Origin: Octopus bimaculoides
Taxonomy: Eukaryota
Direction of reading: 5' to 3'
Assembly (NCBI RefSeq): GCF_001194135.2
Contig: NC_068982.1
Coordinates: 137,995,278-138,027,723 of the forward strand
DNA length: 32,446 nucleotides
The position numbers and the translations under genes were made by a program. The notes under the pieces are model-generated. The model was not told where the DNA came from. It saw only the letters and a program-made list of their open reading frames with translations, and did not search any database. Positions 20,003 to 22,701 of this stretch are shown one piece after another (within the stretch, counting starts at the first letter, position 1; the number at the start of each line of letters is the position of its first letter).

Positions 20003-20279
20003 ATTGTGTTTTCCTGAAGAATATTCTACATAATTCAAAATTTGGGAGCAGTAAGTTTCTATAGAACTGTTAACCTCATACATTTACGTTTCATTAGAGT
20101 TCAGTAAGAACAGTTGCCATGACACGGGAAGAATGTAATGTTTTGGATTGTTGCCAAACATCTGAGAGTGAGGAAGATCAAGAAAGTGTTGTCACCTTAG
20201 TCATAAACTATTAAAATTTGATCCAGATTTTTTTAGCCGTTTGGGTTTCAGTTTTCTCCATACTAGAGAGTTCTTGGGC
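20003..20279. repeat. Duplicated unit, copy 1 (candidate ncRNA)
   Basis: Direct repeat of 22425-22701; 20110-20220 is identical to 22532-22642. Confidence 0.9.
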
Positions 20280-20517
20280 CATGAGCTGCACCAGATTTGA
20301 ACTTGAGACCTATGAGCTAATAGTCTGATATGTTAACACAGCTAAACCAAACAGTTTTAGTGTCAGATCTTGACTGTATAAAGTACGATGTGTTGGAGAA
20401 GTCAACACTGGCATCATTTGAAAATAGACTAAGGCATGAAGTTTGTATCATAAAGCTAGGGGCAGTCTCAAGCAGGCTGCCACCAAAAGGATTAAGTCTT
20501 GGCTATCCTATTTTTAA

Positions 20518-20737
20518 TCCTTTTGCACTTAAACCAACCATATCAGACCCAAATATTCTACCTGTTTCATGTTCAAATTGGCCAGATTGGGCCCCTCGTC
20601 TTACCTTCCAATGGCATTCTAAAGATAAACAATTACATCACTGAAATCTCAAAGCTATGAGATAATACAGGATTAATTCAAAACAATGTGAATAAATGAG
20701 CATAACATTTGACAGAGTTAACCTAAAGGCTAAAGGG
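20518..20737. mobile_element. piggyBac-like MITE with TTAA target site
   Basis: TTAA|TCCTTT ... AAAGGG|TTAA. Related AAAGGGTTAA or TTAACCCTT ends also occur near 487, 5855 and 25107. Confidence 0.6.
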
Positions 20738-21335
20738 TTAAGGTATAAAATAACTGGGATTTCATAAAATAACTGGAATTTTTTAAGGTGGTGTGATTTC
20801 TAAAGAGATTTAGTTGTTATTTGTAGCAGGTGTCTGGAACATAAACATGAAACTTAAAATTGAAAGTTTGTATCATAGAACCAGGGATGGTCTCAGGTGG
20901 ATTGGAATCAATAGATTTTAAGATTAAACTTAGATTTTTACTACTTCTACTACATAAATTTGCATGTTCTTTGGTTGGTTTGCTGGCTGGATGTATTTAT
21001 TGTCACACAAAACTTACAGAAGTTTCCTCACCAGATTGGAGCCTTTCTCAACTCCATGTCAGCTTGAACGTCACTGGATGAAACTAACTGAAGTAGACCA
21101 GGTGTGTTCCCTCTAAATGTTTCTCTCCGCCTTATATCAACTTGAAAGCTTTGTAAAAGAAAAAGAAAAACAAAACTGGCACCAAAGAGGGTTCCAGTTG
21201 ATCCGATCAATGGAACAGCCGGCATATGAAATCTAATGTGCAAGTGGCTGAGCACTCCACAGACATGCGTACCCTTGTCATAGTTCACAGGGAGATTCAG
21301 TGTGATACAGAATGTGACAAGGCTGGCCCTCTGAA

Positions 21336-21555
21336 GGTGGCGAGCTGGCAGAATCGTTAGCACGCCAGGCGAAATGCTTAGCGGTATTTCGTCTGCCGCT
21401 ACGTTCTGAGTTCAAATTCAGCTGAGGTCGACTTTGCCTTTCATCCTTTCGGGGTCGAATAAGTAAGTACCAGTTACGCATTGGGGTCGATATAATCGAC
21501 TTAATCCGTTTGTCTGTCCCCTCTGTGTGTAGCCCCTTGTGGGTAGTAAAGAAGT
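21336..21555 (+). mobile_element. Young full-length SINE B with a 17-bp target-site duplication, nested in an older repeat (about 21175-21690)
   Basis: TSD AAGGCTGGCCCTCTGAA (21319-21335) / AAGGCTGGCCCTTTGAA (21556-21572). Confidence 0.9.
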
Positions 21556-21920
21556 AAGGCTGGCCCTTTGAATTACAGGTGCTACTCATTTTTGCCGGCT
21601 GAGTGGACTGGAGCAATGTGAAATAATGTGCCACTGAGAATTGAAATCACAACCCTACAATCATGAGCTGAACACCCTAACCACTAAACTACTTGCCTTC
21701 ACTTGAAAGCTTTGTAAACTGGATGGAAAAGCACAGCAGTGGCCCCTTGAATATAAACACTATAAACATATAATGGGTCCTTGAATTAACTGACATTTGT
21801 AACCAATAAATTGGATATCTTTCATTATTTTCAGTCACCAAATTGCAACCATGTCGGGACACAGCATCCAAAGGTTTTTTTAGTTGATTTTATTGACATG
21901 AGCATTTATTTTGTAAAATT

Positions 21921-22423
21921 CATCATCATCATCGTTTAACATCCGCTTTCCATGCTGGCATGGGTTGGACAGTTTGACTGAGGGCTGGCAAGCCAGAAGG
22001 CTACACCAGGCTCCAATCTGATCTGGCAGAGTTTCTACAGCTGGATGCCCCTCCTAACGCTAACCACTCAGAGAGTGTAGTGGGTGCTTTTTACGTGCCA
22101 CCAGCACGAGGGCCAGTCAGGCGGTACTGGCAACACTCAAATGGTGCTTTTTACATGCCACTGGCACAGGACCAGTTAGGCAGCACTGGCAACAACCACG
22201 CTGGAATGGTGCTTTTTAAATCACTAATTTACTTTTTGACATAAACACAACTCAACTCATTGTTGTATGCTACACAGCTTCCATCTACCAAATTCCACTT
22301 TCAATACATTGACCCTCAGGTCAGTCAGAGGGCTACAGCTGAAAGCACTTGCTCAAAGTACTACACAGTGGGATTGAACTTGGAATCACAAGGTTGTGAA
22401 GTGAACTTAACCATACAGCTATG
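21921..22423 (-). mobile_element. RTE-related 3' end (21921-22215) and a diverged SINE A head (about 22275-22423)
   Basis: Family motifs in reverse orientation. Confidence 0.75.
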
Positions 22424-22424
22424 C

Positions 22425-22701
22425 ATTGTGTTTTCCTGAAGAAAATTCTACATAATTCAAAATGAGAGAGCAGTGGGTGCCTATAGAACTGTTAACCTGA
22501 TACAGTTCTGCTTCATCAGAGTTCAGTAAGTACAGTTGCCATGACACGGGAAGAATGTAATGTTTTGGATTGTTGCCAAACATCTGAGAGTGAGGAAGAT
22601 CAAGAAAGTGTTGTCACCTTAGTCATAAACTATTAAAATTTGGTAAAGATTTTTTTCACCTTTTGTGTTTCAATATTCTATATACTAGAGAGTTCTTGGG
22701 C
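22425..22701. repeat. Duplicated unit, copy 2 (candidate ncRNA)
   Basis: Direct repeat of 20003-20279. Confidence 0.9.

What the first reader, a model, noticed from the sequence alone, without database searches (positions are those of the whole stretch)
20003..22701. Duplicated 277-bp unit with a 111-bp perfectly identical core and blockwise-diverged flanks
Seen: 20003-20279 and 22425-22701 are direct repeats. The core 20110-20220 equals 22532-22642 with no differences, while the flanks alternate between conserved blocks (39 nt with one mismatch, 18 nt, 19 nt) and highly diverged patches. Neutral decay would not leave this pattern, so it implies selection or gene conversion. The core has a hairpin (ATGTTTTGG-ATTGTTG-CCAAACAT) inside an outer ATGAC/GTCAT stem. 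On the minus strand the unit ends with a short stem followed by ACA. On the plus strand there is CTGA-GA-GTGAGGA (D'/C'-like) and a 31-codon ORF (MTREECNVLDCCQTSESEEDQESVVTLVINY). Inference: a duplicated intronic ncRNA (sno/scaRNA-like), a duplicated exon, or an enhancer. I cannot assign strand or class.
Basis: partly seen in the sequence, partly recalled or inferred. Interest (0 to 1): 0.7.

Follow-up and report, generated by a model that had tools for sequence, protein, structure and literature searches.

The report
Two-copy conserved non-coding DNA element
A 280-bp stretch of non-coding DNA occurs exactly twice in this genome, 2.4 kb apart, and its central 85-111 bp is identical between the copies and almost unchanged in related species, which fits a small duplicated regulatory-type DNA element better than an RNA gene, an exon or a transposon.

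Summary
Positions 20003-20282 and 22425-22704 are gapless direct repeats with 27 mismatches in 280 nt, and the 111-nt core is identical (chance about 1e-5).

- **Copy number:** the genome holds exactly two copies. Contig graphs of four individuals and raw-read depth both show this, while neighbouring SINEs reach depths in the thousands.
- **Age:** both copies, each with its own flanks, exist in at least three related lineages, so the duplication predates their split.
- **Conservation:** the central 85 nt (20128-20212) is identical between organism A and the most distant lineage that holds the unit, whose flanks differ by 5-10% (P about 0.004 at the regional rate).
- **Gene conversion:** two lineage-specific substitutions (20125, 20170) sit in both copies. 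This points to conversion acting together with constraint.
- **ORF:** the 20170 change puts a stop codon into the 31-codon ORF.
- **RNA:** there is no Rfam hit, no fold signal on either strand, no C box and no covariation. Three raw RNA runs and four RNA assemblies show nothing; one indexed RNA run holds a single unspliced contig at depth 2.3.

Best reading: an old local duplication, later spread apart by SINE insertions, of a lineage-restricted conserved non-coding element. A cis-regulatory role is inferred and untested. Interest is modest.

The parts
20003..20282 (.). Copy A of the 280-bp unit
   Evidence: Direct repeat family D20; gapless alignment; blastn
22425..22704 (.). Copy B of the 280-bp unit
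   Evidence: Same as copy A
20110..20220 (.). 111-nt core of copy A, identical to 22532-22642 in organism A
   Evidence: In four individuals it collapses into one 111-nt contig at twice the flank depth (X1, X5; X6, X10)
22532..22642 (.). 111-nt core of copy B
20128..20212 (.). Central 85 nt of copy A. It is identical between the copies in lineage V (runs X15, X16, X18, X19, X20) and in X14. It has 0 differences from organism A in V and 1 in X14 (20170 G>T, present in both copies)
   Evidence: A shared 85-nt contig in each of those runs; statistics
22550..22634 (.). The same central 85 nt in copy B
20003..20041 (.). Left conserved block (39 nt; 22425-22463 in copy B): 4 parsimony changes over all reconstructed sequences, against about 0.3 per site in the variable patches
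20143..20157 (.). Imperfect palindrome TTGGATTGTTGCCAA, one mismatch from the NFI-type consensus TTGGC(N5)GCCAA; also at 22565-22579. This is a lead only
   Evidence: 3 matches in the window against 1.0 expected, not significant by itself
20282..20357 (-). Degenerate tRNA-like piece that ends at the right edge of copy A; copy B has no counterpart
   Evidence: ARAGORN only at the relaxed threshold; not found at the default setting or by Rfam; low copy number
22226..22435 (-). tRNA-derived SINE whose 5' head abuts, or overlaps by about 10 nt, the left edge of copy B. It is already present in the related species
   Evidence: nhmmer profile built from 7 copies in the window; 23-52 contigs per run pile up at 22372-22424; single contigs span 22195-22579 in the other species
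20424..20943 (.). Mid-repetitive insertion in the spacer
   Evidence: Depth profile
21152..21775 (.). Nested high-copy SINE insertions in the spacer
   Evidence: Depth up to 1e7 in contigs and about 3,400 in raw reads; families D5, D15 and D17
21880..22225 (.). Further high-copy repeats in the spacer

Best explanation
A 280-bp piece of non-coding DNA was duplicated locally, before the lineages sampled here diverged. The two copies probably lay a few hundred bp apart at first. SINE and other repeat insertions then filled the spacer to its present 2.1 kb. The flanks of the two copies drifted apart (14-19%). The central 85-111 bp did not. Short-tract interlocus gene conversion keeps it identical between the copies, and it changes several-fold more slowly than its flanks between species, which points to purifying selection. 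It is not detectably transcribed, has no RNA-structure signal and does not keep an open reading frame. The constraint therefore most likely acts on the DNA itself: a lineage-restricted cis-regulatory module (clustered factor-binding sites, enhancer or silencer type) present as a homotypic pair. Shown: the duplication, the two-copy status, its age, the slow core, the concerted changes, and the lack of RNA evidence. Inferred: selection as the cause of the slow core. Speculative: regulatory function and any particular binding factor.
For: (1) Exactly two copies. In X1, X5, X6 and X10 the contig graph has two left arms, one 111-nt contig at twice the depth, and two right arms; nothing else aligns at 80% or better. 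Raw DNA reads give depth about 1-2 on the unit, against about 3,400 and 7,200 on the neighbouring SINE bins. Only 4 reads align at 80% likeness, which matches two copies at roughly 0.7x sampling if the genome is about 2.7 Gb (my assumption). (2) The duplication is old. Lineage V (X15, X16, X18, X19, X20) has both copies, and about 15 copy-specific flank states are shared with organism A, for example at 20045, 20057-58, 20083, 20086-87, 20089, 20095, 20109, 20235-36 and 20244. (3) The core is slow. A vs V gives 0/85 in the centre against 19/195 (copy A) and 10/195 (copy B) in the rest of the unit; one-sided Fisher P = 0.0008 and 0.025. At the regional A-V rate of 6.5%, P(0 in 85) = 0.004. Parsimony gives 0.06 changes per site in the centre and 0.29-0.38 in the variable patches. 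Conversion alone cannot lower divergence between species. (4) Concerted change. 20125 C>A is in both copies of V, and 20170 G>T is in both copies of X14. (5) Not RNA. Searches give no Rfam hit on the unit apart from a chance-level match to a Salmonella sRNA (E = 3). Fold z-scores run from -0.19 to +0.66. The covariation term is -1.06 kcal/mol. Three raw RNA runs show no reads on the unit at 95% and none at 80% apart from one partial read. Four whole RNA assemblies show nothing. Only one indexed RNA run holds core words: an unspliced 243-nt contig at depth 2.3. (6) Not coding. 20170 G>T turns GAG into TAG, X17 carries non-synonymous changes, and Pfam is silent. (7) After removing repeats, the spacer has only about 450 nt of unique sequence.
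Against: There is no direct evidence of regulatory activity, and no ATAC-type run could be listed. The constraint test rests on few lineages and short sequence. If the two copies evolve as one unit, the whole-tree excess is weak: my rough estimate, not a tool result, is 4 events against about 8.7 expected (P about 0.07). X17 copy B has 4 private changes in the core (3 of them in the central 85 nt), more than its flanks predict. The outer 26 nt of the 111-nt core change at the flank rate in V copy A. The unit was not found at 80% or better in organism F, so conservation is shallow. The NFI-like site is not above chance. The RNA libraries examined would miss small non-polyadenylated RNAs and stage-specific transcripts. 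The other species' sequences were rebuilt from difference tables that were partly truncated.
Confidence: 0.45

Rival explanations
1. The duplicate is neutral and has a gene-conversion tract. The core has no function; repeated short conversions keep the copies identical, and the low divergence between species is chance or a local mutational cold spot.
For: Concerted changes at 20125 and 20170 show that conversion happens. X17 copy B changed faster than its flanks. If the two copies count as one lineage, the whole-tree deficit is only marginal (my rough estimate). There is no expression and no known motif above chance.
Against: Conversion does not reduce divergence between orthologues, yet A and V are identical over 85 nt while the surrounding DNA differs by 5-10% (P = 0.004 at the regional rate; Fisher P = 0.0008 for copy A). 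A second block (20003-20041) is also slow. Identity was already complete before the lineages split, whereas the flanks had by then fixed about 15 copy-specific differences.
Confidence: 0.25
2. The unit is a transposon relic. Either the two units are the LTRs of an old LTR element, or they are copies of a low-copy SINE whose tRNA-like head survives next to copy A.
For: The units are direct repeats of LTR-like size around a 2.1-kb interior. Copy A can be read as TG...CA (20006...20281). A degenerate tRNA-like piece on the minus strand ends exactly at the right edge of copy A, like a primer-binding region or a SINE head.
Against: No other copy at 80% or better exists in any genome examined. I saw no target-site duplication on reading the flanks (ATACG or CGATT on the left, AACTG or TAACT on the right). 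There is no polypurine tract before copy B; a SINE head sits there. The interior has no gag/pol remnant. The flanks outside the unit are not alike (z = 0.1 and 1.5) and the flanks are not alike the local SINE family (z = -1.2 to 1.2). The slow core is unexplained under this model.
Confidence: 0.12
3. The unit is a small non-coding RNA gene pair: snoRNA or scaRNA-like, or a Pol III transcript driven from the tRNA-like piece beside copy A.
For: The conserved core has a small hairpin. CTGA and GTGAGGA motifs are present. A tRNA-like neighbour lies beside copy A. The libraries examined are not suited to small non-polyadenylated RNAs.
Against: There is no Rfam family at gathering score and only chance-level matches. 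Folding is no better than shuffles on either strand. There is no exact C box and no terminal C/D arrangement. There is no covariation. Seven RNA runs show no reads or contigs, and only one indexed RNA run has a depth-2.3 contig, which runs unspliced through both diverged flanks. On the minus strand a TTTT run (plus-strand AAAA at 20214-20217) lies between the tRNA-like piece and the core and would stop Pol III; this is read from the sequence plus general knowledge.
Confidence: 0.08
4. The unit is a duplicated exon (coding, micropeptide or UTR) of a rarely expressed gene.
For: A 31-codon ORF in a GCCATGA context lies in both copies. AG dinucleotides lie just upstream, and copy B has G|GTAAAG after the stop. 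V copy B has a synonymous CGG>AGG change.
Against: A stop codon (GAG>TAG) sits in both copies of lineage X14. X17 has N>S, S>T and E>K changes, and V copy A has R>N. The donor-like site is not conserved (GATCCA in copy A). No spliced reads or joints touch the unit. The only RNA contig is colinear with the genome. There is no Pfam match.
Confidence: 0.05

Closest known systems
Lineage-specific conserved non-coding elements (CNEs), such as the cephalopod CNE candidates of Schmidbaur et al. 2022 (PMC9023564)
   Same: Non-coding, about 100 bp, at or above 95% identity between species while the surrounding DNA diverges, unique or near-unique, and embedded in repeat-rich DNA.
   Different: Conservation is shown here only among close relatives, and the unit was not found in organism F. 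It is present as a local pair. No overlap with open chromatin is known. In that paper only 12 of 1187 coleoid CNE candidates overlapped ATAC peaks, so CNE status alone does not demonstrate an enhancer.
Paralogous sequences homogenised by interlocus (ectopic) gene conversion, as in duplicated genes, paired LTRs and palindrome arms
   Same: A tract of complete identity bounded by diverged flanks, substitutions shared by both paralogues within one lineage, and copies close together on one chromosome in the same orientation.
   Different: The tract is very short (85-111 nt) and non-coding. It also shows reduced divergence between species, which conversion alone does not produce.
Shadow or redundant enhancer pairs, and exapted repeats acting as enhancers (for example AmnSINE1, cited in PMC4824008)
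   Same: Two similar non-coding modules a few kb apart, with a conserved core and freer flanks.
   Different: No activity data exist. The unit is not derived from a recognisable high-copy repeat.
Central domains of SINE superfamilies (CORE, V, Deu, Ceph, Meta; PMC4824008)
   Same: The pattern of a conserved central block with diverged ends, and a tRNA-like piece next to one copy.
   Different: SINE domains occur in hundreds to many thousands of copies. This core has two copies and no further match at 80% or better.
Box C/D and H/ACA snoRNAs or scaRNAs
   Same: Comparable size, a possibly intronic or intergenic location, and short CTGA and ACA motifs.
   Different: No C box, no terminal stem, no double-hairpin fold, no Rfam match and no RNA.

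Membership tests
Box C/D snoRNA | C box (RUGAUGA) near the 5' end and D box (CUGA) near the 3' end, brought together by a terminal stem | tested here: not met
   No exact RTGATGA on either strand of either copy. The only one-mismatch sites are GTGAGGA, 3' of a CTGA (an internal D'/C' order with no terminal boxes), and CTGATGA on the minus strand of copy B only.
Box C/D snoRNA | Match to a curated family model | tested here: not met
   0 hits at gathering score in the window. In E-value mode the only snoRNA models hit lie outside the unit, with E > 2.
H/ACA snoRNA / scaRNA | Hairpin-hinge(ANANNA)-hairpin-ACA architecture with stable stems | tested here: not met
   Minus-strand folds of 85, 111 and 146 nt have z = +0.41, -0.19 and +0.35 against shuffles. 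The ACA near the minus-strand 3' end is a trivial trinucleotide.
Any stable small RNA gene | A discrete transcript | tested here: inconclusive
   Three RNA-Seq runs gave no reads on the unit at 95% and only one partial read at 80%. Four RNA assemblies gave no contigs. One indexed RNA run holds an unspliced contig at depth 2.3. Libraries for small non-polyadenylated RNA were not available.
microRNA precursor | A hairpin of about 60-80 nt with a stem of about 20 bp | tested here: not met
   The only hairpin has an imperfect stem of 8-9 bp; the fold is no better than shuffles.
SINE / SINE central domain | Dispersed, high copy number | tested here: not met
   Two copies per genome in four individuals of organism A and in lineage V; raw-read depth about 1-2.
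SINE / SINE central domain | tRNA-related head followed by a body and a LINE-type or simple-repeat tail | tested here: inconclusive
   A degenerate tRNA-like fold abuts copy A only. There is no tail repeat. The flanks are not alike the local SINE family.
LTR retrotransposon (paired LTRs) | TG...CA termini, target-site duplication, primer-binding site, polypurine tract, gag/pol interior | tested here: not met
   TG...CA can be read in copy A only (copy B ends in AA). Reading the sequence showed no target-site duplication and no polypurine tract. The interior ORFs have no Pfam match. The tRNA-like stretch lacks the TGG start and is far longer than a primer-binding site.
Protein-coding or micropeptide exon | Reading frame kept across species, with changes mostly synonymous | tested here: not met
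   GAG>TAG in both copies of X14, and three non-synonymous changes in X17.
Protein-coding or micropeptide exon | Splice junctions seen in RNA | tested here: not met
   No joints touch the unit. The X43 contig is colinear with the genome across both core borders.
Conserved non-coding element | Divergence between species below the local neutral rate | tested here: met
   0/85 against 19/195 and 10/195 (Fisher P = 0.0008 and 0.025). P(0) = 0.004 at the regional rate of 6.5%. X17 copy B is an exception.
Conserved non-coding element | Deep conservation (beyond the genus) | tested here: not met
   No contig of organism F (X39) lies on the unit at 80% or better. The index found core words only in organisms A-E. 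X39 has low coverage, so this is a weak negative.
Enhancer / cis-regulatory module | Open chromatin, enhancer marks or reporter activity | not testable with these tools
   No ATAC-type run could be listed.
Interlocus gene conversion tract | Lineage-specific substitutions shared by both paralogues, while the flanks keep orthologous relationships | tested here: met
   20125 in V and 20170 in X14 are present in both copies. About 15 flank sites group by copy, not by species. There are only two informative sites in the tract.

The most novel reading that the evidence does not exclude
The pair could be a young, lineage-specific functional innovation: either a duplicated enhancer born within the octopus lineage and kept in register by gene conversion, or an unannotated small RNA locus (possibly Pol III-linked through the adjoining tRNA-like piece) that standard RNA-seq misses. 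In the second case it would be a new RNA class with no Rfam relative.
Probability: 0.1. Interest if true: 0.55.

Novelty: new member of a known kind. Interest (0 to 1): 0.3.

Why it matters
If the core is a working regulatory element, it gives a compact and datable example of how a cephalopod genome creates and maintains lineage-specific non-coding function: a local duplication, spreading by SINE insertion, and homogenisation by conversion. It is also small enough (85 bp) to test directly by reporter assay or deletion. If it is neutral, it is an ordinary case of short-tract gene conversion between nearby duplicates. It would then be a caution that 'perfect core with decayed flanks' is not by itself evidence for an RNA gene.

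Tried and rejected
- **Rfam:** gathering-score scan of the whole window and E-value scan of 19800-22900. Nothing credible; the hit on the unit is a Salmonella sRNA model at E = 3.
- **tRNA:** ARAGORN at default settings found none. At a relaxed threshold it gave one degenerate call beside copy A.
- **RNA folding:** core, centre and extended core on both strands all gave z near 0. RNAalifold on four reconstructed sequences gave a covariation term of -1.06 with two isolated double changes.
- **High-copy transposon:** rejected by depth and by contig graphs.
- **SINE central domain (CORE/Ceph/Meta type):** rejected on copy number. Local alignment of the flanks to the SINE family in the window was not better than shuffles, and an nhmmer profile of that family did not hit copy A's flanks.
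- **LTR pair:** no target-site duplication, polypurine tract or gag/pol.
- **Longer duplication:** the homology does not extend significantly beyond 20003 or 20282.
- **Coding:** Pfam on the 31-aa ORF and on neighbouring ORFs gave nothing.
- **NFI-type palindrome:** present but not above chance.
- **Bacterial promoter/terminator scan:** irrelevant for this genome and not above shuffles.
- **ATAC-type libraries:** none could be listed.
- **Literature:** two searches found general work on cephalopod CNEs and SINE superfamilies, and nothing on this element.
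Full report
**1. Observation**

The sequence and the repeat finder (family D20) show 20003-20282 and 22425-22704 as direct repeats of 280 nt, 2422 nt apart and 90% identical. MAFFT needs no gap inside the unit. There are 27 mismatches in 20 clusters. 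The flanks differ by 14% on the left (15/107) and 19% on the right (12/62), while 20110-20220 equals 22532-22642 exactly. With 27 mismatches placed at random, a clean run of 111 or more has P about 1e-5, or 5e-4 if adjacent mismatches are merged. The quoted ORF is correct. The hairpin is imperfect (9 nt against 8 nt). Sensitive blastn finds no further copy in the window. An apparent 30-nt extension to the left is not significant on its own.

**2. Copy number**

- Raw genomic reads of organism A (about 1% of a run) give depth about 1-2 on both copies, against about 3,400 and 7,200 on the SINE bins between them.
- At 80% likeness only four DNA reads lie on a 401-nt stretch around copy A. That matches two copies at roughly 0.7x sampling if the genome is about 2.7 Gb, which is my assumption.
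- In the assemblies of four individuals (X1, X5, X6, X10) the graph is the same. There are two left arms and two right arms, joined by one 111-nt contig at twice their depth (for example 125 against 61 and 59). Nothing else aligns except 32-38-nt fragments.

The unit is therefore a two-copy sequence, not a dispersed transposon.

**3. What lies between the copies**

Depth profiles and repeat families show that most of the 2142-nt spacer is inserted repeats:

- a mid-repetitive block at 20424-20943;
- nested tRNA-type SINEs at 21152-21775;
- further repeats from 21880;
- a tRNA-derived SINE on the minus strand (22226-22435) whose head abuts copy B.

Only about 450 nt of the spacer is unique, so the copies were probably near-tandem at first. 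Contigs of the other species run from that SINE into copy B, so the arrangement is ancestral.

**4. Related species**

The run index found core words in organisms coded A to E. I rebuilt their sequences from the difference tables. The tables were partly truncated, so flank counts are approximate; the core is fully covered.

- **Lineage V** (X15, X16, X18, X19, X20) has both copies, each with its own flanks.
- About 15 flank positions carry copy-specific states shared by A and V. The duplication therefore predates their split, and the flanks have not been homogenised since.
- In V the two copies collapse into one 85-nt contig (20128-20212), which is identical to organism A.
- Outside these 85 nt, A and V differ at 19/195 sites in copy A and 10/195 in copy B. 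One-sided Fisher P is 0.0008 and 0.025.
- At the regional A-V rate of 6.5% (110 substitutions in 1694 nt of unique neighbouring sequence), P(0 in 85) is 0.004.
- A parsimony count over all rebuilt sequences gives these changes per site: 0.06 in the centre, 0.10 in the left block 20003-20041, and 0.29-0.38 elsewhere.

Gene conversion cannot lower divergence between orthologues, so this points to constraint or to an unusually low local mutation rate.

**5. Gene conversion**

Within the homogenised tract, 20125 is A in both copies of V and C in both copies of A. In run X14, 20170 is T in the single 85-nt contig shared by both copies, and G everywhere else. Substitutions that appear in both paralogues of one lineage are the signature of concerted evolution. 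There are only two such sites, so the case is suggestive and not overwhelming.

**6. Exceptions**

- X17 copy B has four private changes in the core (20127, 20138, 20168, 20173; three of them within the central 85 nt), although its flank differs from X14 by about 1%.
- The left half of copy A was not recovered in X14 or X17.
- In V copy A the outer parts of the 111-nt core changed at the flank rate (20124-20127, 20213, 20218).
- If the two copies are treated as one evolving unit, the deficit over the whole tree is weak. My rough estimate, not a tool result, is 4 events against about 8.7 expected (P about 0.07).
- Organism F (X39, low coverage) has SINE matches but nothing on the unit.

The constraint is therefore shallow in time and not absolute.

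**7. RNA-gene readings**

- Rfam gives nothing at gathering score in the window. Over the unit it gives only a chance-level match (E = 3) to a bacterial sRNA model.
- MFE folds of the 85-, 111- and 146-nt versions on both strands are no better than dinucleotide shuffles, with z from -0.19 to +0.66.
- There is no exact C box on either strand. The CTGA...GTGAGGA pair has no terminal partners.
- RNAalifold on four sequences gives a covariation term of -1.06 kcal/mol.
- Three raw RNA-Seq runs of organism A (about 1.7-1.9 Gb read from each) show no reads on the unit at 95%. At 80% likeness there is only one partial read.
- Four complete RNA assemblies have no contig on the core.
- Among indexed RNA runs only X43 holds core words: one 243-nt contig at depth 2.3 that runs colinearly through both diverged flanks of copy A. 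This is what background intronic or genomic signal looks like.

These libraries would not capture small non-polyadenylated RNAs, so an RNA product is unlikely but not excluded.

**8. Coding and exon readings**

The 31-codon ORF is broken in X14 by GAG>TAG in both copies. X17 has N>S, S>T and E>K changes, and V copy A has R>N. The donor-like GGTAAAG is specific to copy B of organism A. No splice joints touch the unit, and Pfam is silent. The minus strand has stop codons in all three frames.

**9. Transposon readings**

A degenerate tRNA-like fold on the minus strand (20282-20357) ends exactly at the right edge of copy A. ARAGORN finds it only at a relaxed threshold. This invites a SINE-head or primer-binding-site reading. 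Against that reading:

- there are only two copies;
- I saw no target-site duplication, no polypurine tract and no gag/pol remnant;
- the flanks beyond the unit are not alike (z = 0.1 and 1.5), and are not alike the local SINE family (z = -1.2 to 1.2).

Copies at 60-80% identity could not be looked for, because the read-laying tool has an 80% floor.

**10. Verdict**

The finding is real and not trivial, but the sno/scaRNA and exon ideas are not supported. The best-supported account is an old local duplication of a non-coding element whose 85-111-nt core is held identical by gene conversion and evolves several-fold slower than its flanks. I attribute this to purifying selection on a DNA-level, cis-regulatory-type element. 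Approximate confidence by step:

| Step | Confidence |
|---|---|
| Old two-copy duplication | 0.95 |
| Gene conversion | 0.7 |
| Selective constraint | 0.6 |
| Regulatory function | 0.35 |

The near-NFI palindrome TTGGATTGTTGCCAA (20143-20157) is a lead only. Published cephalopod CNE screens show that such elements exist and that few overlap open chromatin (PMC9023564), so the functional claim needs chromatin or reporter data. This is a new member of a known kind, and interest is modest.

Noticed in passing
window 28633-28938 and 29656-29961: A 306-nt inverted repeat, 99% complementary, brackets a long run of N (about 29080-29650). It is probably an assembly-gap artefact or a palindromic element.
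   Followed up: no
window 7927-8330 and 17858-18261: A 404-nt inverted repeat, 91% complementary. These are copies of the abundant repeat family with the TTTTACGTGCCAC... motif, which also occurs at 3432-3760, 11406-11610 and 22089-22158.
   Followed up: no
window 21335/21598: A tRNA-type SINE (21336-21597) is nested inside another repeat. Each RNA run has 58-89 reads showing the uninterrupted form (joint 21335>21598 with TTACA), against 2 in the DNA run. This suggests an expressed paralogous copy elsewhere in the genome.
   Followed up: no
window 20161-20195: A 32-35-nt GA-rich piece of the core (TCTGAGAGTGAGGAAGATCAAGAAAGTGTTGTCAC) has one or two further near matches (2-4 mismatches) in single-copy contigs of every species. 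The only RNA read laid lies there. This may reflect base composition or a distant relative of the core.
   Followed up: partly
window 20282-20357, minus strand: A degenerate tRNA-like fold ends exactly at the right edge of copy A and has no counterpart beside copy B. Each genome has one further 38-nt match (20290-20327).
   Followed up: partly
window 20127-20173 (as 22549-22595 in copy B), run X17: Copy B of organism C carries four private substitutions inside the otherwise invariant core, more than its flanks predict. The left half of copy A was not recovered in X14 or X17.
   Followed up: partly
runs X14 vs X15/X16/X19: X14 carries the same organism code as X15, X16 and X19 but a clearly different haplotype that groups with X17. 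This suggests a mislabelled sample or a cryptic species.
   Followed up: no
window 2973-3365, plus strand: A 130-aa ORF (…GSETW…RGRPRKTW…) looks, from my own knowledge, like the C-terminal end of a non-LTR retrotransposon ORF2. Pfam gives no significant match.
   Followed up: partly
window 1934-2123, 6306-6457, 9635-9816, 10735-10901, 14351-14539, 15775-15888, 18833-18992, 22239-22435, 28261-28424, 30113-30300: There are ten or more copies of one tRNA-derived SINE family whose body contains CACTTGCCCAAGGT. From memory of the MIR/CORE consensus, and from the statement in PMC4824008 that octopus OR1 is a CORE-SINE, it looks CORE-like.
   Followed up: partly
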